A stretch of DNA of 63,756 nt, taken from contig NC_068990.1 in assembly GCF_001194135.2 (NCBI RefSeq), positions 33,131,219 to 33,194,974 of the forward strand, in the 5' to 3' direction. The stretch's first letter is position 1. Every line of letters begins with the position of its first letter. The stretch comes from Octopus bimaculoides. Lineage: Eukaryota. Below the pieces are notes generated by a model that was given only the letters and a program-made list of their open reading frames with translations, was not told the origin of the DNA and did not search any database. Below are positions 4,601-52,772 of this stretch, piece by piece. Position numbers and translations under genes: made by a program.

Positions 4601-5073
4601 TGTAAATAGTTACTGTCGATAGATGATGATGTTGACGATGACATAGATTGGACAGATTTTCAAAAGTCTTCCAAATACCTTGCTTGAGGTGCCAGACATT
4701 GTCAGATGTTGTTTGTAAATGTTATGTCAAGTGATCTTTGATCTACCTCAAATAGCACATCAGTAATTTGGTATACTTATGTTAAGACAATATTTAATGG
4801 TAAGAGTTACATATATGTAGAGTTAGGAGCAATGGAGGTGAATGTATTTGTGTTTATAATTTAATCAGAAATGGAGGAGGGTGGTGGCCATGAACTGTGA
4901 TTCCAATGCTTGCAACAAAGCAAACTCTGCCAAAAGCAACTAAGGACCATGTGTCAGTTTTCTGTGATCTTTGGTGCATACACTGTATATGACTTATTTG
5001 TCTTATAACTTTTATATACATATATATTTACAATAGGTCTCACATACACAAACATTTTATATAAGTTCAACAT

Positions 5074-5235
5074 ACAGGCATGGTTGTATGGTAAGAAGCT
5101 TGTTTCCCAACCACTTGGTTCCAGGTTTAGTCCCACTGCCAGGCACCTTTGGGAAGTGTCTTCTACTATAACATCAGGCCAACCAAAATCTTGTGAGTGG
5201 AATTGGTACACAGGAACTGAAAGAAGCTCATCGTA
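5074..5235 (+). mobile_element. SINE family A head
   Basis: Homologous to 9455-9615. Confidence 0.8.
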
Positions 5236-5520
5236 TAATTATATATGATGAGCGTTTGTGATTTTGACTTTCACACATTCATGAGTAGAAAACGTAAGAA
5301 ATTAATCTACATCTTAATTGTTAGACTAATATAATCATGAATATAATTTTAAGTGAGTATGATATCTTTTTTCCATCATAACTTGGATGAAAATATTGCT
5401 ATGATAGTATAGCTTTTAAGAGCTCATTGGAAGTGTCATTCTAGTGCATTGTGAAGTCATTGTATCACAGTGTTGCAAATATTAAATTAAGTTTGAAGTA
5501 CAAAAGAAGCTGATCAGAGG

Positions 5521-5975
5521 AAGTTTAAACTTTTTGGCAATCATTTAGCAAGTATTCTGAGAACATTTAATATCCAAGATCATATCAGTGTTTAACATTA
5601 CCAAAGTATCTATACTGATCTTTATCTATTCCTTTGAACAGACCTGAATTAGATCAGCACCACACCAACCATGCAGAAACAGCTAGGTCACATGTGGGAG
5701 CTCACTGAGGTTAATGATGGCAATAAACTTGCTCAGCTCGATGAATCTGGTTTGGAGGCCTATGAAAAATTGTTCAGAAAACTCAACAATTTTAGGAGGA
5801 AAGACAGGCCAAATTAAAGATCCAAAAGACACATTCACCAGGTCTTTGTTGAAACAAACAGTACCATGGTGCAAGAACATTCCACAAAATAGAGCTCCTT
5901 TGGATATATGGATGAAGAACCTTTGAAAGAAATAGATTCTTTAGCGAATTATATTACATCAAAATCTGACGACTA
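5521..5975 (+). pseudogene. Transib/RAG1-core-like DDE transposase, C-terminal fragment (stops, one frameshift)
   Basis: The frame starting at 5521 reads KFKLFGNHLASILRTFNIQDHISV*HYQSIYTDLYLFL*TDLN*ISTTPTMQKQLGHMWELTEVNDGNKLAQLDESGLEAYEKLFRK. After a frameshift it reads STILGGKTGQIKDPKDTFTRSLLKQTVP. This aligns by eye to the Transib pattern PPTVHKILIH...GQLSEEAQEARNKDF...SRKCS...DVFNRLLLSSDP and to RAG1 HKTLAH...SEGNESGNKLFRR. Confidence 0.7.
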
Positions 5976-6849
5976 AATGTGAGTTAGAAACATTTGGATT
6001 AGTTTTTTGCATCATAGTTATAATTACCAGGTAAATTTTTTCCAGATTTTTTGCAAAATGCAGATAATCTGTAACACATTTTGTCTAGTAAATCCTTCTT
6101 ATTTATTTTGCTTCCTTATTTTATTACAACTGACCCTTGTCCTACCAAACCCACATATCACTTTGAAAAGTAAAAAAACTCTCAAAAGGATATTCTTGAT
6201 ATATTTAGCATTAAAAATTCAACCAAAATTTGATGAATTTTGATGGATAAAAATTATAGAAAGGTGTATCAAATATCAATCAGTTCTTTTGTAAAAAATG
6301 CAAAGGGCAACATTTTGGAATCTGATATTTAATTGGCATATATCTTAAATTTTCAAAATCCAATAGCCTTTAGATGTTATCTGGTGCCCTTTTTTTTTTC
6401 CCAAAAATTACAAAATTCATGTAAAACATGATAAAATTTGAGTAAATTTTACTGGATTTTAGGGATAAATTCCGTAACACCAACGATAACTTCACTGTTT
6501 CTGAAGGTGCAAAAAAAAAAAAAAAAAAGAAAAAACACTAGAATTTGAATAAAACCTATTCTTAGCTGCCTTTCTTCCTTTGGATGACAAAAACAAACAA
6601 ACAAACAAAAAAATTATTATTTATTTATTTTTTTAAAATAGAATTTTCAAGCCATTTTGGTGAATTTTGGCAGGTAAAATTTTGACACTGTTCACATATT
6701 GTTTATTTACAAGTATATCCCAAGTTCAAAATGCCATAAAATTTCTTAAAATTGAAATTTTGGTCAACTTTCTTTTTTTTTTTTGTGTTAGCTTAGACAT
6801 TTATAGTAATTTTCAGAAATTACAACAAAGTATACACTTGGAGACCTTC

Positions 6850-8850: not shown

Positions 8851-9280
8851 TATTGACCTCTTATTGCCTGCCTTACCTCCCCCACATGTGGAGCTATCAA
8901 GCCTCTTGATATATTTTTCAGATATCTGACTTTGGTGCCAAATAAAATGGATTTCCTGATTTCTTGGCAGCTAAAAGTTTTGTGGATGAGTCAGCAGCAG
9001 GATGAAGCCAATATAATATTTACTGTAACAATTTAAAATGAAACAGTTTCATCGGAGCCAGACTAGTGAGAAAACATTCTGTTTCTCACCAACACCAACC
9101 AAGGAAGTAGACTGGAATGGACGAAACAAAGTTAGGATCTAGATATTACTTCATTTAAACTAATAATATCTGTATTATCTGAGGAAGGCATGGATATCTT
9201 GGAATAAAATTCTCCACTGTTGTAGATTTCTAAGCCTTTGTCTACATAAATCAATGATTTATACAAATCTTCTGTCTATT

Positions 9281-9450
9281 ATAGGTGTAGGAATGGCTGT
9301 GAGGCAAGAAATTTGCTTCCCAGCTACAGGGTTCTGAGTTCAATTCCAGTGTGTAACAATTTGGGAAAATGTCTTCTTCTATATTCCTAGGCCTACCACA
9401 GCCTTATGGGTGGATCTGATAGACAGAAACTGAAAGAAGCCCTTTATATA
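9281..9450 (+). mobile_element. SINE family A head (older copy)
   Basis: Diverged homologue of 9455-9615. Confidence 0.75.
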
Positions 9451-9454
9451 TATA

Positions 9455-9848
9455 GGCGCAGGAGTGGCTGTGCGGTAAGTAGCTTGCTTACCGACCACAT
9501 GGTTCCGGGTTCAGTCCCACTGCATGGGACCTTGGGCAAGTGTTTTCTACTATAGCCTTGGGCCGACCAAAGCCTTGTGAGTGGATTTGGTAGGCAGAAA
9601 CTGAAAGAAGCCCGTCATGTATATGTATATGTATATATATGTGTGTGTGTTTGTCCCCCCCAACATTGCTTGACAACCGATGCTGGTGTGTTTATGTCCC
9701 CGTAACTTAGCGGTTCGGCAAAAAGAGACCAATAAAATAAGTACTAGGCTTACAAAGAATAAGTCCCGGGGTTGATTCGTTCGACTAAAGGTAGTGCTCC
9801 AGCATGGCTGCAGTCAAATGACGGAAACAAGTAAAAGAGTAAAAGAGT
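9455..9848 (+). mobile_element. Full-length SINE family A (head + TA/TG linker + tail-1), young
   Basis: GGCGCAGGAG-TGGCTGTGCGG (A box), GGTTCAGTCCC (B box), CCTTGGGCAAG core-like motif, 3' (AAAAGAGT) repeats. Confidence 0.9.
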
Positions 9849-14190: not shown

Positions 14191-14482
14191 CATCATCATC
14201 ATCATCATCATCGTTTAACGTCTGCTTTCCATGCTAGCATGGGTTGGACGATTTGACTGAGGACTGGTGAAACCGGATGGCAACACCAGGCTCCAATCTA
14301 ATTTGGCAGAGTTTCTACAGCTGGATGCCCTTCCTAACGCCAACCACTCCAAAAGTGTAGTGGGTGTTTTTACGTGTCACCCGTACGAAGGCCAGTCAGG
14401 CAGTACTGGCAACAACCACGTTCAAAATGGTGTATTTTATGTGCCACCCGCACAAGAGCCAGTCCAGGGGCACTGGCAACGA
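14191..14482 (-). mobile_element. SINE family B, young copy
   Basis: Near-identical to the reverse complement of 1-130 and to 35690. Confidence 0.9.
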
Positions 14483-14563: not shown

Positions 14564-14696
14564 CATCGCCATCATCGTCGTTTAACGTCCGCTTTCCATG
14601 CTAGCATGGGTTGGACGATTTTACTGAGGACTGGTGAAACCAGATGGCTACACCAGGCTCCAATCTGATTTGGCAGAGTTTCTACAGCTGGATGCC
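14564..14696 (-). mobile_element. SINE family B running into N-gap
   Basis: Same 3' end as 14191. Confidence 0.85.
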
Positions 14697-14980
14697 NNNN
14701 NNNNNNNNNNNNNNNNNNNNNNNNNNNNNNNNNNNNNNNNNNNNNNNNNNNNNNNNNNNNNNNNNNNNNNNNNNNNNNNNNNNNNNNNNNNNNNNNNNNN
14801 NNNNNNNNNNNNNNNNNNNNNNNNNNNNNNNNNNNNNNNNNNNNNNNNNNNNNNNNNNNNNNNNNNNNNNNNNNNNNNNNNNNNNNNNNNNNNNNNNNNN
14901 NNNNNNNNNNNNNNNNNNNNNNNNNNNNNNNNNNNNNNNNNNNNNNNNNNNNNNNNNNNNNNNNNNNNNNNNNNNNNNNA
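14697..14980. other. Assembly gap. Other N-runs: 19984-20275, 27064-27073, 33570-33579, 35846-36246, 37676-37991, 48333-48997, 51866-51910, 52616-52772
   Basis: Runs of N. Confidence 1.
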
Positions 14981-15545: not shown

Positions 15546-15850
15546 TGCTAATTTTATTTATTTACATGTATTGGGTTGTTTTAGGTTTTTCTTATTATGT
15601 TAGATACATTGCACTGTTTATGAGCTTTCATAACATATAGAGTTTTACTTACTAATAAAGTAGTTTTAGACACTTTATCCTATGTTTTCTACATGCACCC
15701 ATTGATTTCAATCTCACCAGAAAAATATTTTGGACATTTTGGCTACACTTACCAAAACATTGTAAGTTGGAAAAGGACTAAAAAATCCTATTATATTTTC
15801 ATAATGAAATATTATTAGGAATTGTTTTAAAAAAATTGTTAAAAGATTTT

Positions 15851-16220
15851 GTGTAGGAGTGGATATGTGGTAAAGAAGCTTGCTTCCCAATCACATGGTT
15901 TTGGGTTCAGTCCCACTGCATGGCACCTAGGGAAAGTGTCTTCTACTATAGCCTCGAGCTAACTGACCAAAGCCTTGTGAGTGGATTTGGTAGACGGAAA
16001 CTGAAAGAAGTCTGCTGTATATGTGTGTGTGTGTGTGTGTGTCTACCATTGCATGACAACCAATGTTGGTGTGATTACGTCCCCATAACTTAGCAGTTTG
16101 GCAAAAGAGACTGATAGAATAAGCACTAGGCTTACAAAGAAGAAGTCCTGGGGTTGAGTTGTTTAACTAAAGACAGTGCTCCAGCATGGCTGCAGTCAAA
16201 TGACTGAAACAAGTAAGAGA
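15851..16220 (+). mobile_element. Full-length SINE family A (tail-1)
   Basis: Colinear with 9455-9848. Confidence 0.85.
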
Positions 16221-24551: not shown

Positions 24552-24593
<42 letters not shown>

Positions 24594-25120
24594 ATGAGTT
24601 TCTTTCAGTTTCCATCTACCAAATCCACTCACAAGGCTTTGGTCGGCCTGAGGGTATAGTAGAAGACACTTGCCCAAGCGACCATGCAGCGAGACTGAAC
24701 CTGAAAGCATGTGGTTGGGAAGCAAACTTCTTACCACACTGCCACTCCTGCACCTATATATATAATGTATATATATGTGTGTGCGTGTGTGTGTGTGTAC
24801 ATATATACACACACACACATATATCATAAATGCAGCGCATACACATACCCCAATACACACACACACATCTCACAAACACATACTTTACAAATACACATCA
24901 CACAAGCACATATCTCATAAATACTTATCCTGTAAACACAAGCACATGCGTACACACACACACATTTGTGCACCACACAAGCATATACCTCACTAACGCA
25001 CATTTCGCAAATGCAACCCACACATCTCATTACAAACACGCATCTTCTAACCACTATCCACAAATACACATTAATAAATATGCATATCACAAACTGACAT
25101 CTTAGAAACACATGTACATA
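24232..25120. repeat. Degenerate ~15-bp minisatellite (CACAAACACACATCT-like), split by a SINE
   Basis: Recurring CACAAA...CATCT units at 24232-24362 and 24860-25120. Confidence 0.6.
24365..24756 (-). mobile_element. Full-length SINE family A (tail-1)
   Basis: Reverse complement of 9455-9848. Confidence 0.9.
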
Positions 25121-26490: not shown

Positions 26491-26696
26491 ACACACTCAC
26501 CTCCTGAGTTTTGTTTTCCATACAGTACGTGCAATTCTTTGTTTACTCATCCATGGTACACTACATATTTTCTTTTAATATATTTTAATTAATGTGTTTA
26601 TAATGGAAGGAAAGTTTTTATGATACTTTTGGGGTATCTTCTTCCATAATAATTATTCTGTTGATTCAAGGAGCTGGAAATATGAAGAATATATAT

Positions 26697-27030
26697 CATC
26701 ATCGTTTAACGTCCGCTTTCCATGCTGGCATGGGTTGGACGGTTTGACTGGGTGAGCCAGATGGCTGCACCAGGCTCCAATCTGATCTGACAGAGTTTCT
26801 ACAGCTGGATGCCCTTCCTAATGCCAACCACTCTGAAAGTGTAGTGGGTGCTTTTACATACCACGGGCACAAGGGCCAGTCAGGCGGTACTGGCAACAGC
26901 CATGCTCAAATGGTGGTTTTACGTGTCACCTGCACAGGAGCCAGTCCAGCGACACTGGCCATGCCCTCGCTCGAATGTTGTTTTCCACGTACCACCGGCA
27001 CAAGTGCCAGTAAGGCAACGCTGGTGCCAA
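26697..27030 (-). mobile_element. SINE family B, longest copy in window
   Basis: Homologous to 14191-14482, with additional upstream sequence. Confidence 0.9.
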
Positions 27031-27073
27031 TATATATATATATATATATATGCTCGCATGCATNNNNNNNNNN

Positions 27074-27215
27074 TTTACGTGTCACCTGCACAGGAGCCAG
27101 TCCAGCGACACTGGCCATGCCCTCGCTCGAATGTTGTTTTCCACGTACCACCGGCACAAGTGCCAGTAAGGCAACGCTGGTGCCAATATATATATATATA
27201 TATATATGCTCGCAT
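27074..27215. other. Exact duplicate of 26918-27063 across a 10-N gap (likely unmerged contig overlap)
   Basis: Identical sequence on both sides of the gap. Confidence 0.85.
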
Positions 27216-27296
27216 GCATATATGCGTGTATGAGTGAGTAAGTGTGTGTGTGTATAGGTAGTTAGATAAATAAACACAAATCTGTTCTCAGTAAAT

Positions 27297-29339: not shown

Positions 29340-32300
29340 ATTGATAGTTTCATCAACATGACAGCTATGTGGTCTTTATCGAACTATATAGCCCAAATTT
29401 CCAAGTAACTGTCTGTCTTTGCTTTGTAAAACTAATACATGTACATACATTTACACACACACACACACACACACATGCATGCATGCATGCACACATTTAT
29501 ATCAATTCACCAAAATTCAGTTGGTTTGTCTCACTTGCAGTGTATTCAGATCAATCAACGAACTCTGTAGACTGACCTGTATAATAGCTTTGCAGACACA
29601 GTCAAAGCAGTGATGATGGTTGAACTGGAAGGCGATATATTCCAGCAAGTACATTTATTGGAAGCTCAAGACATGGTAAAGCGCTATCAAGGTGCCATGG
29701 TCATTGTAAGGAAATTTGTAAAGCCTACATTATTTGTCACTTTCATCTGCAAACCAAAATGAGAAGAAATAACAAGAGAGCTAAACACTGATCAAACTGT
29801 TGTGAATTGTCCTGAAATAACTGCGTGAATTTTCGAAACAAACCCGCATCAACTTCTACTGGACATCAAATCTAGAGTTTTGGAAAAGTTAGTGGCCGGT
29901 GTGAACACAACTGAATTTCAAAAAAAAAAAAAAAAAGTGGTCTATTACACTGTCACTTCCTATTTACAATAGAAAACAGTCACAATGCATAGCAAGAAAT
30001 CAACAAAGTTGTTTCTGCTGAACTTGCTAGCTGAGAAAATCCAAACATGGCTGCTCTATATATTTCGGTGAAGGAGCACATGATACACAAACCATGTGGA
30101 GAGCATAATGCAATTTCACCTTGCATCATAAAAGGATTCTGCAGAAGAGTTATCCCTGTGAATTCCATTCACAAATTATCACTAACGATGAATGTTATCC
30201 ACTGTATTGGTGACAAATCCCAGCTGAAGGAAACCATACTGCCTCTGTGAGAACTGGAAATAGGGACATCGATGTAGATAACAGACACATAGTTCCCTGT
30301 TTTGCCTGGCTGCTGCAGAAATGTGAAGCTCACATTAATGTTGAGTGGTGTGTGTCAATCAAAGCTGTATAAATATATATTCAAAGGAGCAGACCATTCT
30401 GTAATTTCTCCAGAAAGAAAGCAAGGATGGATTTGTACTGATCTTGGTGATGCAGCTCAAAACAAGATCATGAAATATGAAAATTACAGGTACCTTGAAT
30501 CGTCTGAATCATGCTTGAGACTTTCTGAGTTTCCAATTCAACAAGGAAGTCTTTCTGTTGAATGCCTTTAAATTCACTTGCCCAATCAACATGTAGTTTT
30601 TGATATAAACAGCCCAGAATATGCTTTGCAGCAAGCTCAAATAACTAAACTCACTGCTTATTTTGATAAGAATCATGAAGATGCAGAAGCAAGAAGTATT
30701 CTTTATTGTGACTTCTCTGATTATTGTACATCGAGTAAGACCTAGAGAAGGAGAGTAAGAAGGAATAACACAGACAATTGGTAGAATGTACACAGTCTAT
30801 TTGTCTTAGGATAACTCTTCCATTTGAGATTGTTGCTTCACCAGAAGATCAGAGCTACAAATTTTGAAGACCTGCTGATAGTTGATAATGCAACATGTGG
30901 ATGTTTTAAACATGGATGTCAGGCTATGAATCTTCTTGAAAATGAGCCTGGAAGAGCACGTGTATATGCATGAGGTAACCACAACTCATTCTGCTAACCA
31001 GCTTAGAAGGTTATTTGAGACAATTCTTCGCCTCTGTTGTCCATCTGAGCCTCTAACATTATACAACATGCTCCATAATAATCTGTCTGAAGACTTTCTG
31101 TGTCACAGAAAAGAAACAATGATGTTTGAGCATGCAACAGAAGTGGCTGTTAAATGACATCTTGTGTGTTCTGGATCATCAATTAATACAATATCATTGT
31201 TCAACAGTTGATTATGATTTATCTGCTGCAAATCACCAAGAACAGACTGCATCTGTCAATCAAGATGAAACAAATCCCTCAGCAAAAATCCTACTACACT
31301 GATCACATTGACATGTTTAACAATTAACAGAGGATTGTCTTTGAAATAATCAAAACAAAAATTGACTCCAATTAAGGTTTTTTTTAATTTATTGAGGCTG
31401 GAGGAGGAACAGGCAAAAGTTTCCTGTTAAACTTGTGTTTACAAAAAAAAAAAAAGAAAAGAGGAATCACCCTCACTACAGTTTCCTTTAGTATTGTGGT
31501 GACACTGATAAGGCTCAGTGACACTGTTTCTTCCTGCTTCATGTTCCCCATTCTAGTAATATCAACTCCAACATGTCATGTGTTGCCTAATGATGCAACT
31601 GGATGCCTTTTATATGAAGCTCAGCTGTTGGTAAGGGATGAAGCCCCTATGTGTCCCAGACATCTTTTTGAAACTTTAAATTGCACACTTCAGGATGACA
31701 TGAACAATGAACAACTCCTTGGAGGAAAATTATTGGTCCTTGGTGGAGATTTGTGATAAATTCTTCCTGTAGTTCACAAAGTCACTCAACCTTCACTAAT
31801 TAATGCATGCATAAGTCATTGCAAAGCATTGCATCTACAGACAAATATGAGAGTTCTAAATTGTCTAAATAACAATGATATACAAATAATTAACTAAATC
31901 ATTATATGAACTGGCTGTTGGAACTGAGCAAAGTAAAGACTCCCAACATCATTGATGGTGATCTTTTATTTAAAGATGCCACTGTATTCCCCACTTTCCT
32001 TGTCTGTAAGTTCCAAAGAAAAATTGATTGAATTTGTAGATGATTTACCAGCGAACTACAGAAATGGGCAATGAATGTCTTCAAGAGTATTTTAACAACA
32101 AAAATACATATAAGTTAATAAGCTGAATAATGACATTATGGGAAAACTTCTGGGAAATGGAATTATATTAAGAAATATGAATTCAGTGGCAGAAGAAAAT
32201 CAATCTTTTTTCTATTCTCCAGAATTTTTGAATTCAGTAAGTATATGTGGGCTTCTTCCTCACACCATCAAGATCAAGACTCCAGTAATGCTATTACAAA

Positions 32301-35689: not shown

Positions 35690-35845
35690 TCGTCGTTTAT
35701 CATCGTCGTTTAATGTCCGCTTTCCATGCTAGCATGGGTTGGACGATTTGACTGAGGACTGGTGAAACCGGATGGCAACACCAGGCTCCAATCCAATTTG
35801 GCAGAGTTTCTACAGCTGGATGCCCTTCCTAACGCCAACCACTCA
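35690..35845 (-). mobile_element. SINE family B, young, into gap
   Basis: Near-identical to 14191-14350. Confidence 0.9.
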
Positions 35846-38812: not shown

Positions 38813-38850
38813 TATATATATATATATATATATAGTTACAGATAGTTATA

Positions 38851-39240
38851 TGCAGGAAGACTGTGTGGTAAGAAGCGTGCTTCCCAACTACATGGTTCTG
38901 GGTTCAGCCCCACTGTGTGACACCTTCGGCAAGAAGTGTCTTCTATTATAGCCCTGGGCCAACCGCAGTGTTGTGAGTGAAGTTGGTAGATGGAAACTGA
39001 AAGAAGTCCTTCGCACATGTGTGTACCTTTGGGTTTCCTTGTCTTGATATTGCATAATAGATGTCATTTAAACAATGTTATTTATTTCTAATATCTTGTG
39101 AGGACATGTCTGGCTGTATTACTTCATTTGGAAAAGAAGTGTGGGTTGGCAACAGGATGGGCATTTGGCCATAGAAAACTTTCCTGAATAATCTCTGTCT
39201 GACCCATACAAGTGTGGAAAAATGGGTATTAAAATGATTA
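38851..39240 (+). mobile_element. SINE family A head joined to tail-2
   Basis: Family A head continues into the tail seen at 9860-10110 instead of tail-1. Confidence 0.75.
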
Positions 39241-46006: not shown

Positions 46007-46814
46007 TATATGAATTTAACTGCCTTCTTATCAAAATTTTTATTTTCTTCAGATATTGTACTTGTTATTTAACCTTTGCAGACTTTTCACTGGTGTTATC
46101 ATTTTACACTCCATTATCATTAGTATTTATAGTAATTTATAATTTTCCCAACAGTGTTTTTTCTTAAATACCAAATACTTCTTATCTTTCTTCTCCTCTC
46201 ATGCATGCCCACCACCTCTTCGTCTGCTCCATGCCTTCTCACACACAATGAAATTACACCTAGACCCCTCTACCCCATTCCACACTCCTACTACAACTCC
46301 ACACATGCAGATCTCCAGACACCTCTTAAAAAGCCACATGCACCTTAGACCACCACACACACTCCCCCATCTCTGTATGTGATTACTATTTTCTACATGC
46401 ATCACGTGCCTACTCCTCTCTCTTCTACTATAGAACTACATTCTCATATGGCCCCTAACTCCTTTTTTTAATACTTTCCAGCCATTATTTTTTGTACATT
46501 TTATTTTGCAACCATTTTTTTCTCATTCTTTTATTTTCTCTTTTCTAGTTTGCTTTTGGTTAAGAACTAGCATCCAAAATGTCAAGATTATTTCTCTTCT
46601 TTTTTAAGTGTTAAATGAACATAACATTTTTAAAAAAAACTAGTCCCTCCCATGATGTCTTCTTCTTGTATTCATTGTCTTCTTAATGTGTGTGATTTGT
46701 GTGTGTCTGTGTGAGTCATGCTTTTAGAAACCAAATGAACACACTAAAAACTATACACACACACACACATATATATATATATGTATACACATATACATAT
46801 ATACGATTATGATG

Positions 46815-47178
46815 GGGATGATGGCTGTGTCATAAGATGTTTGCTTGCTAACTACATGGTTCTAGGTTCAGTCTCACTACATGACACCTTGGGCAAGTAT
46901 CTCCCAATATAGCATCAAACCAACCAAAGCCTTGTGCATAGGTTTGGTAGACGAAAACTGAAAGAAGCCCATTGTGTATGTGTGTGTGTGTGTATGCATG
47001 TGTCTGTATTTGTCCCCTGCCATCAGCTTGATGACCAGGGCTGGTGTGTTTATGTCACTGTAACTTAGCAGTTCAGTAAAAGAACTGATAGAATAAATAC
47101 TACGCCAACAAAGAATAAGTCCTGGGGCTGATTTCTTCCACTAAAACCCTTCAAGGCAGTACTCCAGCATGGTCACAG
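46815..47178 (+). mobile_element. SINE family A (tail-1), 3' end cut at LINE junction
   Basis: Colinear with 9455-9812. Confidence 0.8.
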
Positions 47179-47595: not shown

Positions 47596-47718
47596 GAGAC
47601 AACACAAACAAACACAATATATAAACACATATATATATATACATTCATACATACATACATGTATATAAAATTAATATAGACACCATTGTGCAATGTTTTA
47701 CCAAAAAGAAAAACTATA

Positions 47719-47783
47719 TCATTGTCGTTTAACGTCTACTTTCCATGCTAGCATGGGTTGGACGATTTGACTGAGGGCTGGTG
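47719..47783 (-). mobile_element. SINE family B 3' fragment
   Basis: GTCGTTTAACGTCTACTTTCCATGCTAGCATGGGTTGGACG. Confidence 0.8.
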
Positions 47784-49654: not shown

Positions 49655-50208
49655 CGAGGTTGAGTCAAAAAGTAATGCCAATTTGTTTAAGACAGGTATA
49701 ATTACCAACACAGGAATATGTATCATACATCAAAATGAAGCTGGTCCTCTGTAGATCACATCCCTACTTCTCAACATAGTCACCATTTCTCTCAATAGCA
49801 ACGTTCCACCTTCGAATGAGTGCATGTATCCCTACCCTGTAAAATTCTGTTGACTGTTCTTTGAGCCAATTCTTCACTACCTCCACACTCACCAGATTTA
49901 GCGCCTTCAGACTATTATCTGTTCGGCGCCACGAAGTGGAGTTTGAAAGGCAAACATTATTCCAGTGACGAAGAAGTGAAAACTGTAGTGAAGAAGTGGC
50001 TCCAAGAACAGCCGACAATTTTACGGGGAAGGAATACTGCTCTCATTCGAAGGTGGAACATTGCTATTGAGAAAAACGGTGACTATGTTGAGAAGCAGGG
50101 ATGTGATCCACAGAGGACCAGCTTCATTTTGATGTATGACACATGTTCCTGTGTTGGTAATTATACCTTTTCCTACACAAAATGGTATTACTTTTTGACT
50201 CACCCTCG
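49655..50208. mobile_element. Fold-back mariner derivative: two inverted copies of the transposase 3' end
   Basis: TA|CGAGGTTGAGTCAAAAAGTA ... TACTTTTTGACTCACCCTCG|TA; arms 49655-49880 and 49985-50208. Encodes HSPDLAPSDYYLF and LKGKHYSSDEEVKTVVKKWL...ALIRRWNIAIEKNGDYVEK. Confidence 0.9.
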
Positions 50209-50464
50209 TACAATGAGTCAAAGCTAAAATTCACAAAATACTCCACTAAGACTCTATCCACATCCCTGTTAACTCAATCTGAAATCTATTTCGTTGTTAC
50301 AGTAAAATATCCTCCTCTCCTTCTCTTCACTGTTATAAGGCAGAAAAAAAATTGATCATCGTAAACTACAACTTTAGTTTTTGTTTACAAATGAACTTAG
50401 GTAAAATAGTTCGAAAATTTCAGGTTGTGTCATTCTGAAGGATGAAATAATTTTTTGTACTATA

Positions 50465-51920: not shown

Positions 51921-52297
51921 CTCTTTTGCTCTTTACTCTTTTACTTGTTTCAGTCATTTGACTGCAACCATGCTGGAGCACTGCCTTTAGTCGACCAAAT
52001 CGACCCCAAGACTTATCCTTTGTAAGCCTAGTACTTATTCTATCGGTCCCTTTTGCCGAACCGCTAAGTTATGAGGATGTAAACCCACCAACATCAGTTG
52101 TCAAGCAATGGTGGGGGGACAAACACAGACACAGACACACACATACACATATGACAGGCTTCTTTAAGTTTCCATCTACCGAATCCACTCACAAGGCTTT
52201 GGTTAGCCTGAGGCTAGAGTAGAAGACACTTGCCCAACGTGCCATGCAGTGAGACTGAACCTGGAACCATTTAGTTGGGAAGGAAGCTTCTTACAAC
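51921..52297 (-). mobile_element. Near full-length SINE family A (tail-1)
   Basis: Reverse complement of 9455-9848. Confidence 0.9.
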
Positions 52298-52772
52298 ATG
52301 GACTCTTTCCCTATTCTTGCTCTATTGGAGCATTTGAGTAAAGTTGTATTAATGTGTCCAACTGATTAAAAGATTCTATTTATTTATTTATGCAGCTGAG
52401 GATAGCCCTGTATTTAAACTGATGTAATGATTGCATTGTTCAATTAAATGGAGTTGCTTGAAACAGTCATACTGCATCACCTCTTGATATCCTGTTGCTT
52501 ATTTTGATTTTATTCACCTTACTTTGAGTTGTATGGATAATACCATACTGATCTGGTACTTCAACCTAAGTACCTAATTCAGCTGAATCTCAATTTTATA
52601 TATATATATATATATNNNNNNNNNNNNNNNNNNNNNNNNNNNNNNNNNNNNNNNNNNNNNNNNNNNNNNNNNNNNNNNNNNNNNNNNNNNNNNNNNNNNN
52701 NNNNNNNNNNNNNNNNNNNNNNNNNNNNNNNNNNNNNNNNNNNNNNNNNNNNNNNNNNNNNNNNNNNNNNNN

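What the first reader, a model, noticed from the sequence alone, without database searches (positions are those of the whole stretch)
5521..5975. Fossil Transib/RAG1-core-like transposase in a cephalopod-type genome
Seen: a frame missed by the ORF track (it is split by stops) reads ...ISTTPTMQKQLGHMWELTEVNDGNKLAQLDESGLEAYEKLFRK, then after a frameshift STILGGKTGQIKDPKDTFTRSLL. Established: RAG1 has HKTLAH (Zn-binding histidines) followed by SEGNESGNKLFRR (catalytic Glu), and Transib has PPTVHKILIH...QLSEEAQEARNK...RK.S...DVFNRLL..SDP. Inference: QKQLGH is the His pair with the first His changed by a single base, and the GAG at 5755-5757 is the catalytic Glu. The three-residue WEL..VNDG spacing could mark a lineage distinct from insect Transib. 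I cannot say whether it is already catalogued in octopus.
Basis: partly seen in the sequence, partly recalled or inferred. Interest (0 to 1): 0.75.

Follow-up and report, generated by a model that had tools for sequence, protein, structure and literature searches.

The report
Dead Transib transposase tail fragment

Summary
The peptide strings are in the sequence exactly as quoted. They are far beyond chance. A stitched 90-aa peptide finds 29 proteins at E<=1e-3 among 1.84 billion (best 1.3e-8). A profile of those relatives hits the window once, at 5491-5805 (70 bits, E 3.7e-23), rising to 87 bits when the three frame pieces are joined.

The relatives are intact ~700-aa proteins from marine metagenomes. 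Their profile matches only Helicoverpa Transib transposase (1e-51), amphioxus RAG1L (1e-36) and RAG1 (1e-26) in the PDB. An AlphaFold model has the RAG1/Transib fold. Their elements end in CACAGTG heptamers with asymmetric spacers and carry one ORF, with no RAG2-like gene.

The fossil keeps the second Zn-binding His, the catalytic Glu codon (GAG 5755-5757), a decayed Cx2Cx3GHx4C knuckle and the natural stop (5974-5976). The first His is now Gln (CAG, one base from His).

It lacks the first ~75% of the protein, including both catalytic Asp. It also has 4 internal stops, 2 frameshifts and 2 deletions, and no recognisable terminal repeats.

The host ("cephalopod") could not be tested. Verdict: a real new member of a known kind, of low to moderate interest.

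The parts
5491..5793 (+). Fossil piece 1 (codon phase n=1 mod 3). It covers the C-terminal-domain helices, the ZnH2 His pair and the catalytic-Glu motif, corresponding to family-profile positions ~529-631 of 702. It contains three internal stops: TAA 5593-5595, TGA 5635-5637 and TAG 5650-5652.
   Evidence: Family HMM hit 5491-5805, 70.1 bits, E 3.7e-23. tblastn of 29 relatives, E down to 7e-19. Stop coordinates.
5674..5691 (+). ZnH2 motif codons: CAG(Q)-AAA-CAG-CTA-GGT-CAC(H). The ancestral motif is H-K-x-L-x-H. The first His is mutated to Gln by one base (CAG versus CAY).
   Evidence: Relatives carry HKxLxH at the aligned position. It aligns with HzTransib VHKLLIH and RAG1 HKTLAH. Sequence read.
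5755..5757 (+). GAG codon of the third catalytic residue (Glu of the DDE triad), within LDESGLEAYEK.
   Evidence: It aligns with the Glu of the relatives' LDESGLE(A/G)CNK, of HzTransib SEEASEARNK, of BbRAG1L SEGNEAGNK and of RAG1 SEGNESGNK.
5795..5875 (+). Fossil piece 2 after a +1 frameshift near 5793/5795: GGKTGQIKDPKDTFTRSLLKQTVPWCK. It corresponds to the relatives' sRKtSQxxNLtDxxxRlW...pfCk, with a deletion of about 10 codons (the 'asDPvvnaer' segment).
   Evidence: HMM alignment of the stitched peptide to positions 632-670. phmmer alignments cross the junction. P0008 alignment.
5870..5895 (+). Decayed CTT*/CTT1 zinc knuckle (ancestral C-x2-C-x3-G-H-x4-C). It now reads C-K, then a ~5-codon deletion with a -1 frameshift, then E-H-S-T-K-stop-S. 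AAA/TAG/AGC are each one base from the R/Y/C codons of 'RYC'.
   Evidence: Compared with P0008..LPWCKTCEIRGHSTRYCEFKYVEEGPLKEVDAL... The knuckle is present in nearly all C-terminally complete relatives, starting a fixed 76 residues after the start of the HKxLxH motif (its first His). The motif is defined in PMC7204232. Codons read.
5875..5976 (+). Fossil piece 3 (back in phase n=1 mod 3): EHSTK*SSFGYMDEEPLKEIDSLANYITSKSDD, then the natural stop TAA 5974-5976. It is the acidic C-terminal tail of the transposase and has an internal stop, TAG 5890-5892.
   Evidence: It aligns with the P0008 tail GHSTRYCEFKYVEEGPLKEVDALVSYMKSEQEN. Translation and stop coordinates.

Best explanation
Window 5491-5976 is a dead, 5'-truncated remnant of the transposase gene of a Transib-superfamily DNA transposon.

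The ancestral element was a cut-and-paste transposon with one ~700-aa ORF. That ORF encoded an RNase-H-fold DDE enzyme, the ancestor type of the RAG1 core. Such enzymes bind terminal inverted repeats that begin with a CACAGTG heptamer, nick them, form hairpins on the flanking DNA and reinsert with a 5-bp target duplication.

Only the last ~160 codons survive here: the C-terminal domain with the ZnH2 histidines, the catalytic Glu, a CTT*-type zinc knuckle and the acidic tail. They are broken by 4 stops, 2 frameshifts and 2 deletions. The ~530 codons that carried both catalytic Asp, the ZnC2 cysteines and the DNA-binding domains are gone, and no terminal repeat can be recognised. It therefore does nothing now and is neutral debris.

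The lineage it came from carries the Cx2Cx3GHx4C tail and a long zinc-binding region shared with RAG1L. It therefore most likely belongs to the 'Subgroup I' Transibs of Tao et al. 2022 rather than to the insect-type (Subgroup II) Transibs.

Shown: homology, extent, lesions and family fold. Inferred: the transposition mechanism (taken from HzTransib and RAG biochemistry) and the Subgroup I assignment.
For: (1) Unbiased search. There are 29 hits at E<=1e-3 in 1.84 billion proteins, all but one (P0027, a repeat protein) carrying or aligning to the same ITP(S/T)xHKxLxHSWEL...LDESGLE..NK region.

(2) The family HMM hits the window once, at 70.1 bits and E 3.7e-23. The stitched peptide scores 87.2 bits over profile positions 531-680 of 702.

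(3) Family identity. Pfam RAG1 PF12940 is matched at up to 1.4e-15, and the precomputed domain is PF26100 RAG1_RNase_H. The profile against the PDB gives HzTransib 1.1e-51, BbRAG1L 1.3e-36 and RAG1 ~1e-26, and nothing else. An AlphaFold2 model of P0047 (pLDDT 88) matches RAG1, HzTransib and BbRAG1L at Foldseek E ~1e-22 to 1e-17, with TM (target-normalised) up to 0.83. The next fold, Hermes, is at 2e-3.

(4) The relatives are real transposons. L006 has ends CACAGTG+21 nt+GTCTTAGGGA and CACAGTG+11 nt+GTCTTAGGGA, and the 5' boundary is confirmed by divergence between two contigs exactly at CACAGTG. L001 has ends CACAGTG+8/18 nt+GCAGACATTC, flanked by TCATC/TCATC. Each has a single large ORF.

(5) Lesions were read directly.

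(6) No other part of the 702-position profile matches anywhere in the 63.7-kb window.

(7) Subgroup I traits. The Cx2Cx3GHx4C knuckle is present in relatives, with a remnant in the fossil. There are ~40 residues after the ZnC2 CxxC that are absent from HzTransib but colinear with BbRAG1L. The TIRs are asymmetric. The criteria come from PMC9435367.
Against: - The fossil peptide alone gives no hit to Pfam RAG1 or to any PDB chain at E<=10. The assignment is transitive through unnamed metagenomic proteins.
- In direct pairwise tests the fossil resembles the BbRAG1L (z 7.3) and RAG1 (z 6.3) C-termini more than HzTransib (z 2.5). A RAG1L origin is therefore not excluded by the fragment itself.
- No TIR or TSD could be found for the fossil.
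- No second copy exists in the window, and the host genome could not be searched.
- The one TSD example in a relative lies in a CAT microsatellite, so there is roughly a 1 in 3 chance of a match.
- No formal phylogeny was made with the reference Subgroup I and II sequences.
- The only named relative (Mnemiopsis, P0067) lacks the knuckle.
Confidence: 0.9

Rival explanations
1. It is a fossil of a RAG1-like gene from a two-gene RAGL (ProtoRAG-type) transposon, the kind already known from bivalve molluscs, not of a single-gene Transib.
For: The fossil keeps a remnant of the Cx2Cx3GHx4C CTT* knuckle that defines invertebrate RAG1L. Its pairwise scores are higher against the BbRAG1L and RAG1 C-termini (z 7.3 and 6.3) than against HzTransib (z 2.5). 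RAGL transposons exist in molluscs (PMC7204232).
Against: The closest relatives (up to 53% identity) form a family whose profile scores HzTransib at 179 bits, above BbRAG1L at 129 and RAG1 at 97. Their TIR-bounded elements are 3.5-4.3 kb with one ORF and no room for a RAG2L gene. CTT1 is also a trait of Subgroup I Transibs (PMC9435367). [quoted passage not shown] There is no non-repetitive ORF of 90 aa or more on the opposite strand downstream of the fossil.
Confidence: 0.07
2. The copy is not simply 5'-truncated. It is an internally deleted, non-autonomous element whose 5' terminal repeat (CACAGTG at 5466-5472) was joined directly to the last quarter of the ORF.
For: CACAGTG, in the orientation of a 5' end, lies 19 nt upstream of the first homologous codon. 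The heptamer or its complement occurs only 4 times in 63.7 kb. Internal deletion is the usual fate of DNA transposons (general knowledge).
Against: The sequence after the heptamer does not resemble any relative's TIR. No inverted partner or CACTGTG was found within 2.5 kb (TIR-sequence search) to 2.6 kb (inverted-repeat search) downstream. The heptamer may lie in still weakly coding sequence (H-S-V in CIVKSLYHSVANIK), although adding that stretch gains 3.7 bits or less. This was a post hoc observation.
Confidence: 0.12
3. The resemblance is a chance match of short motifs, or the fragment belongs to another DDE superfamily (hAT, P, Harbinger, Chapaev) or to a host gene.
For: Direct Pfam and PDB searches with the fossil peptide alone are empty, as is the word-indexed protein search.
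Against: The best hit is E 1.3e-8 against 1.84 billion proteins, and the family profile gives 70-87 bits. That family matches only RAG1/Transib by sequence. By fold, the nearest other family is Hermes at E 2e-3. Stops and frameshifts exclude a functional host exon.
Confidence: 0.01

Closest known systems
Subgroup I Transib transposons (Tao et al. 2022, Natl Sci Rev, PMC9435367): Mnemiopsis, Pleurobrachia, Hydra Transib-9 and bacterial Transibs
   Same: The relatives of the fossil have the three traits given for this subgroup. They carry a CTT1/CTT* tail with Cx2Cx3GHx4C. They have a zinc-binding region as long as in RAG1L, about 40 residues more than HzTransib after the CxxC. Their TIRs are asymmetric, with spacers differing by 10 bp. 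They have a single ORF and no RAG2L. The fossil keeps the knuckle remnant.
   Different: No tree was built with the published Subgroup I sequences. The only named relative (a Mnemiopsis hypothetical protein, 33% identity) lacks the knuckle. The fossil itself lacks the regions that carry two of the three traits.
Helicoverpa zea Transib transposase (HzTransib; PDB 6PQN and others), the insect-type or Subgroup II Transib
   Same: It is the best PDB sequence match of the family (1.1e-51) and has the highest target-normalised TM-score (0.83). The second-His-to-Glu spacing of 22 residues is the same, as are the HKxLxH and S/D-E-x-x-x-E-A-x-x-K motifs. Transib TIRs start with a CAC heptamer and make 5-bp TSDs (PMC1131882).
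   Different: HzTransib has no Cx2Cx3GHx4C tail; its alignment ends before the knuckle. It lacks ~40 residues after ZnC2, and it is shorter (497-aa construct versus ~700-730 aa). Identity to the family is only ~20%.
RAG1-like proteins of RAGL/ProtoRAG transposons (amphioxus BbRAG1L, PDB 6B40; molluscan RAGL_B of oysters and mussels, PMC7204232)
   Same: They share the fold and the DDE, ZnC2 and ZnH2 architecture. They share the CTT* knuckle motif. The alignment is colinear through the zinc-binding region.
   Different: RAGL elements carry a convergent RAG2L gene, and their RAG1L has N-terminal zinc-finger/RING regions. The relatives here have neither. The profile score is lower than to Transib (129 versus 179 bits), and the second-His-to-Glu spacing is 23 rather than 22.
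Vertebrate RAG1 core (V(D)J recombinase)
   Same: It is homologous in the C-terminal domain. HKTLAH corresponds to the fossil's QKQLGH, and GNESGNKLFRR to LEAYEKLFRK. The fossil against the zebrafish RAG1 C-terminus gives z 6.3, with 0 of 1000 shuffles as high. The relatives' TIR heptamer CACAGTG equals the consensus RSS heptamer (RSS consensus from established knowledge).
   Different: RAG1 is a domesticated host gene that works with RAG2, has an acidic CTT without the knuckle, and has a second-His-to-Glu spacing of 20. The window element is a decayed transposon fragment.

Membership tests
Transib superfamily (DNA transposon) | The transposase is significantly similar to Transib TPase and the RAG1 core. 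| tested here: met
   The fossil matches its family at E 1.3e-8 among 1.84 billion proteins and at 87 bits to the profile. The family matches HzTransib at 1.1e-51, Pfam RAG1 at up to 1.4e-15, and the RAG1/Transib fold. The link is transitive; the fossil alone does not reach Pfam or the PDB.
Transib superfamily (DNA transposon) | A catalytic DDE triad sits in conserved motifs, with a long D-to-E distance. | tested here: inconclusive
   In the fossil only the Glu motif survives (GAG 5755-5757). The part that would hold both Asp is missing from the window. In relatives, D255 and D354 (P0047 numbering) are invariant and the Glu motif is conserved at about residue 626.
Transib superfamily (DNA transposon) | Terminal inverted repeats begin with a CAC..GTG (RSS-heptamer-like) sequence. 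| tested here: inconclusive
   In the fossil no 3' TIR was found within 2.5 kb downstream. A lone CACAGTG at 5466 is ambiguous. The relatives L001 and L006 have CACAGTG at both ends.
Transib superfamily (DNA transposon) | Insertion produces a 5-bp target site duplication. | not testable with these tools
   The fossil's ends are unknown. In relative L001 the flanks read TCATC|element|TCATC, but inside a CAT microsatellite. The L006/L007 flanks show no TSD.
Subgroup I Transib (Tao et al. 2022) | A CTT1 (CTT*) C-terminal tail carries the Cx2Cx3GHx4C motif. | tested here: met
   The motif is present in nearly all C-terminally complete relatives at a fixed distance. The fossil has an in-register remnant, C-K-[deletion]-E-H-S-T-K-stop-S. 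The motif is defined in PMC7204232 and the subgroup criterion in PMC9435367.
Subgroup I Transib (Tao et al. 2022) | The zinc-binding domain contains a region equivalent to alpha11-alpha12. | tested here: inconclusive
   In relatives, profile positions 385-441 align to only 17 residues of HzTransib but are colinear with BbRAG1L, and the model has helices at 382-405. No residue-level structural superposition was made. The fossil lacks this region.
Subgroup I Transib (Tao et al. 2022) | The terminal inverted repeats are asymmetric. | tested here: met
   This was tested in relatives only. The heptamer-to-second-element spacers are 21 versus 11 nt in L006 and 8 versus 18 nt in L001.
RAGL (ProtoRAG-type) transposon | A convergent RAG2-like kelch gene lies next to RAG1L between the TIRs. 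| tested here: not met
   The relatives' elements (3.5 and 4.3 kb) hold one large ORF only. In the window there is no non-repetitive ORF of 90 aa or more on the minus strand within 4.5 kb downstream. A profile search for RAG2L in the window could not be run, because the tool refuses translations with stops.
Pfam PF12940 (RAG1 recombinase domain) | The score reaches the gathering threshold of 25 bits. | tested here: not met
   The fossil peptide gives no hit at E<=10. Relatives score 28.9 bits (P0001), 27.4 (P0002), 28.3 (P0047) and 57 (P0067). Membership by descent is therefore inferred through the family, not shown for the fragment alone.

The most novel reading that the evidence does not exclude
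The fossil would record past activity, in this (putatively cephalopod) genome, of a CTT1-bearing, RAG1L-proximal Transib lineage ('Subgroup I'-like). In the paper read here, that group is named only from ctenophores, Hydra and bacteria. Its living relatives appear as intact, multi-sample copies in Tara Oceans and other marine metagenomes. They have a perfect RSS heptamer (CACAGTG) and 12/23-like spacer asymmetry (a 10-bp difference) but no RAG2L. That would widen the host range of the lineage thought to be intermediate between Transib and RAGL transposons. It would also offer apparently active elements for testing how asymmetric ends were recognised before RAG2 was acquired.
Probability: 0.5. 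Interest if true: 0.45.

Novelty: new member of a known kind. Interest (0 to 1): 0.3.

Why it matters
On its own, a truncated dead transposase fragment in a repeat-rich genome changes nothing.

Its modest value is as a record. Transib elements are rare in molluscs. An HMM survey of mollusc genomes that included Octopus sinensis found one Transib ORF in total (PMC10294476). None of the nine papers in the searched library that mention both Transib and cephalopods has either word in its title or abstract, so none appears to be about a cephalopod Transib.

The lineage is the one that shares the CTT* zinc knuckle and the long zinc-binding domain with RAG1L. It is therefore relevant to how the RAG recombinase arose. 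The more useful by-product is the set of intact marine-metagenome relatives with CACAGTG ends and asymmetric spacers, which could be expressed and assayed.

Tried and rejected
- Direct Pfam hmmscan (E<=10) and PDB phmmer (E<=10) with the fossil peptide found nothing relevant.
- The word-indexed protein search with a 168-aa stitched peptide found nothing.
- A search for more of the transposase elsewhere in the window, by tblastn of 29 relatives and by the family HMM on six frames with filters off, found nothing beyond 5491-5976.
- Extending the fossil upstream in another frame (5400-5490) gained 3.7 bits or less and was rejected.
- A search for a 3' TIR downstream found nothing above shuffled controls. 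It used CCCACTGTG with up to 1 mismatch, Smith-Waterman with five relatives' TIRs, and an inverted-repeat search.
- DNA-level comparison of the fossil and its flanks with relatives' loci found only faint coding similarity (68.6% over 118 nt to L004) and no UTR or TIR similarity.
- TIRs of L009-L012 (the P0049 family) were not resolved, because there is no CACAGTG in those contigs.
- A TSD for L006/L007 was not found.
- Host identification failed. The PIF1-like ORF returned nothing at E<=1e-10 in the protein search. Rfam gathering and tRNA scans of the window were empty. Cluster look-ups gave no names.
- Two structural papers (PMC6494689, PMC6872938) are not held.
- No second copy of the region exists in the window.

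Full report
**Observation**

The window is a 63.7-kb eukaryotic draft scaffold. It is 35% G+C, has 2179 N in gaps, and is rich in microsatellites and short interspersed repeats.

At the coordinates given, the frame with codons starting at n=1 (mod 3) reads ...ISTTPTMQKQLGHMWELTEVNDGNKLAQLDESGLEAYEKLFRKLNNF.... GAG 5755-5757 is the Glu of GLEA.

**Is it more than chance?**

Direct comparison of the peptide with Pfam and with all PDB chains gave nothing at E<=10. The word-indexed protein search gave nothing either.

An exhaustive phmmer of the stitched 90-aa peptide against 1.84 billion representative proteins gave 29 hits at E<=1e-3. The best was 1.3e-8 at 53% identity. Most alignments run through the frameshift junction to query position 63-66, which supports the stitched reading.

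A profile built from 38 long relatives hits the six-frame translation of the whole window once, at 5491-5805 (profile positions 529-635 of 702), with 70.1 bits and E 3.7e-23. When the three frame pieces are joined, the score rises to 87.2 bits over profile positions 531-680.

**Anatomy of the fossil**

- Piece 1 is 5491-5793 (phase 1).
- Piece 2 is 5795-5875, after a +1 shift.
- Piece 3 is 5875-5976, back in phase 1, ending at the natural stop TAA 5974-5976.
- Internal stops are TAA 5593, TGA 5635, TAG 5650 and TAG 5890.
- Against the closest tail relative (P0008...GRKTSQIENLTDTFTRFWLNSDEEVNQQRKMTLPWCKTCEIRGHSTRYCEFKYVEEGPLKEVDALVSYMKSEQEN), the fossil reads GGKTGQIKDPKDTFTRSLL-(about 10 codons deleted)-KQTVPWCK-(about 5 codons deleted with a frameshift)-EHSTK*SSFGYMDEEPLKEIDSLANYITSKSDD*.

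The reading frame can therefore be followed to the true C-terminus.

Nothing corresponding to the first ~530 profile positions is present anywhere in the window. That missing part holds the DNA-binding domains, both catalytic Asp and the ZnC2 cysteines.

A short interspersed repeat copy (5064-5276) and 214 bp of unassignable AT-rich DNA lie upstream. No second copy of the region is in the window.

**What family?**

The relatives are unnamed proteins from ENA and Logan assemblies. Many come from Tara Oceans or other marine metagenomes. Full-length ones are 700-760 aa.

- Sequence. They hit Pfam RAG1 (PF12940) at positions 554-620, and P0067 at 209-615, above the gathering score. They carry the precomputed domain PF26100 RAG1_RNase_H. 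A profile of 29 of them against all PDB sequences finds only HzTransib (1.1e-51, 179 bits), amphioxus RAG1L (1.3e-36, 129 bits) and vertebrate RAG1 (about 1e-26, 97 bits).
- Fold. An AlphaFold2 model of P0047 (pLDDT 88.1, pTM 0.73) matches RAG1, HzTransib (target-normalised TM 0.83) and BbRAG1L at Foldseek E between about 1e-22 and 1e-17. The next fold, Hermes, is at 2e-3.
- Conserved residues. Invariant columns include KxGxDGSGxH (first Asp), DxK (second Asp) and CxLC (ZnC2).

**Are the relatives transposons?**

Yes.

- Two contigs from different samples that carry the identical 733-aa protein are 100% identical from a point that begins exactly with CACAGTG. They are unrelated upstream of it.
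- That element (L006 618-4141) ends with CACTGTG. Its two ends read CACAGTG + 21 nt + GTCTTAGGGA and CACAGTG + 11 nt + GTCTTAGGGA.
- A second element on a 5.4-Mb contig (L001 6896-11187) has CACAGTG + 8 nt + GCAGACATTC and CACAGTG + 18 nt + GCAGACATTC. It is flanked by TCATC on both sides, although inside a CAT microsatellite.
- Each element has one large ORF and no room for a RAG2-like gene.

These are the hallmarks of Transib as described by Kapitonov and Jurka (PMC1131882).

**Which kind of Transib?**

Nearly every C-terminally complete relative has Cx2Cx3GHx4C at a fixed distance, starting 76 residues after the first His of the HKxLxH pair. This is the motif that defines CTT* of invertebrate RAG1L (PMC7204232).

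Tao et al. [quoted passage not shown] They regard these as intermediates between Transib and RAG1L (PMC9435367).

The relatives show all three traits:
- the knuckle;
- about 40 residues after ZnC2 that HzTransib lacks and that align colinearly with BbRAG1L;
- spacers differing by 10 bp.

The fossil keeps the knuckle remnant. I therefore place it, with moderate confidence, in a Subgroup I-like lineage. No tree with the published reference sequences could be made, and the only named relative (a Mnemiopsis hypothetical protein) lacks the knuckle.

1. QKQLGH as the His pair is supported. Relatives read HKxLxH, which aligns with VHKLLIH of HzTransib and HKTLAH of RAG1. CAG (5674-5676) is one base from a His codon.
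2. GAG 5755-5757 as the catalytic Glu is supported by alignment with the Glu of HzTransib ...ASEARNK, BbRAG1L ...GNEAGNK and RAG1 ...GNESGNK. Kapitonov and Jurka list that residue as the third member of the triad.
3. The spacing as a lineage marker is not supported. The distance from the second His to the Glu is 22 residues in the fossil, its relatives and HzTransib. It is 20 in RAG1 and 23 in BbRAG1L.
4. 'Cephalopod-type genome' was not testable. My one attempt to find named same-genome relatives through a PIF1-like ORF returned nothing, and the Rfam and tRNA scans were empty.

One further point concerns the direct resemblance to RAG1. By Smith-Waterman with 1000 shuffles, the fossil resembles the BbRAG1L and RAG1 C-termini (z 7.3 and 6.3) more than HzTransib (z 2.5).

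**How it works**

It does not work now. It lacks three quarters of the enzyme, including two of the three catalytic residues. It has 4 internal stops, 2 frameshifts and 2 deletions in the remaining ~160 codons, and it has no recognisable ends.

By homology with HzTransib and RAG (inference from established biochemistry), the ancestral element moved as follows:
- two ends with unlike spacers were paired;
- the DNA was nicked at the heptamer;
- hairpins formed on the flanking DNA;
- the element integrated with a 5-bp duplication.

**Rivals**

- A RAG1L fossil from a RAGL transposon remains possible at a low level, about 0.07. The knuckle and the pairwise scores favour it. The relatives' profile scores, single-ORF elements and missing N-terminal RING region oppose it.
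- An internally deleted copy whose 5' end is the CACAGTG at 5466-5472 is a variant I cannot exclude, at about 0.12. The heptamer is rare in the window (4 sites), but it has no partner and no TIR-like sequence after it.
- Chance, or another superfamily, is excluded by the statistics.

**Novelty and interest**

Transib, its link to RAG1, the CTT1-bearing subgroup and fossil copies are all known. This is a new member of a known kind.

It is a minor record of a superfamily that is rare in molluscs: one ORF was found in a mollusc-wide survey that included Octopus sinensis (PMC10294476). The papers in the library that mention both Transib and octopus or cephalopods do so only in passing and never in a title or abstract, and the RAGL survey I checked (PMC7204232) has no octopus or cephalopod hit at all.

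The intact marine relatives with RSS-identical heptamers and 10-bp spacer asymmetry are the more interesting by-product.

Noticed in passing
window 5466-5472: A perfect CACAGTG heptamer, in 5'-TIR orientation, lies 19 nt upstream of the first homologous codon of the fossil. Only 4 such heptamers (either strand) occur in the window. It has no inverted partner and no TIR-like continuation. It could mark an internally deleted copy, or it could be coincidence.
   Followed up: partly
L006 618-4141; L001 6896-11187 (relatives from ENA marine and other assemblies): These are intact single-ORF Transib elements whose two ends share CACAGTG and a 10-nt second element. The elements are separated by spacers differing by exactly 10 bp (21/11 and 8/18). 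The long-spacer end is 5' of the gene in L006 but 3' of it in L001. Identical 733- and 736-aa proteins recur in 3-4 independent metagenome samples, which suggests young and possibly active elements in a widespread marine organism.
   Followed up: partly
window 5064-5276 (also 1191-1403, 9277-9660, 15844-16056, 38841-39050, 46805-47017, and inverted copies near 24555-24765 and 52119-52298): A ~200-bp short interspersed repeat family is present at 66-84% identity between copies. One copy sits directly upstream of the fossil. ARAGORN and Rfam do not call it as a tRNA.
   Followed up: no
window 31433-31756 (+): A 107-aa ORF matches the Pfam PIF1-like helicase domain (PF05970, 3.2e-15, positions 46-148 of 223). 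It is probably a Helitron- or PIF1-type fragment. It had no hit at E<=1e-10 in the word-indexed protein search.
   Followed up: partly
window 49943-50227 (+): A 94-aa ORF (…SSDEEVKTVVKKWLQEQPTILRGRNTALIRRWNIAIEKNGDYVEKQ…) looks, from memory, like the C-terminal end of a mariner-type transposase. Pfam gave no hit.
   Followed up: partly
window 14204-14349, 14571-14716, 35699-35844, 47718-47783, 26688-26833: Another repeat family begins ATCATCGTCGTTTAACGTC.GCTTTCCATGCTAGCATGGGTTGGACG. Its copies are up to 95-97% identical, so it is young. Several copies abut N gaps.
   Followed up: no
window 26844-27277: The same ~46-aa ORF segment, and its DNA, appears twice on either side of a short N gap. This is probably a scaffolding or gap-closing duplication rather than biology.
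   Followed up: no
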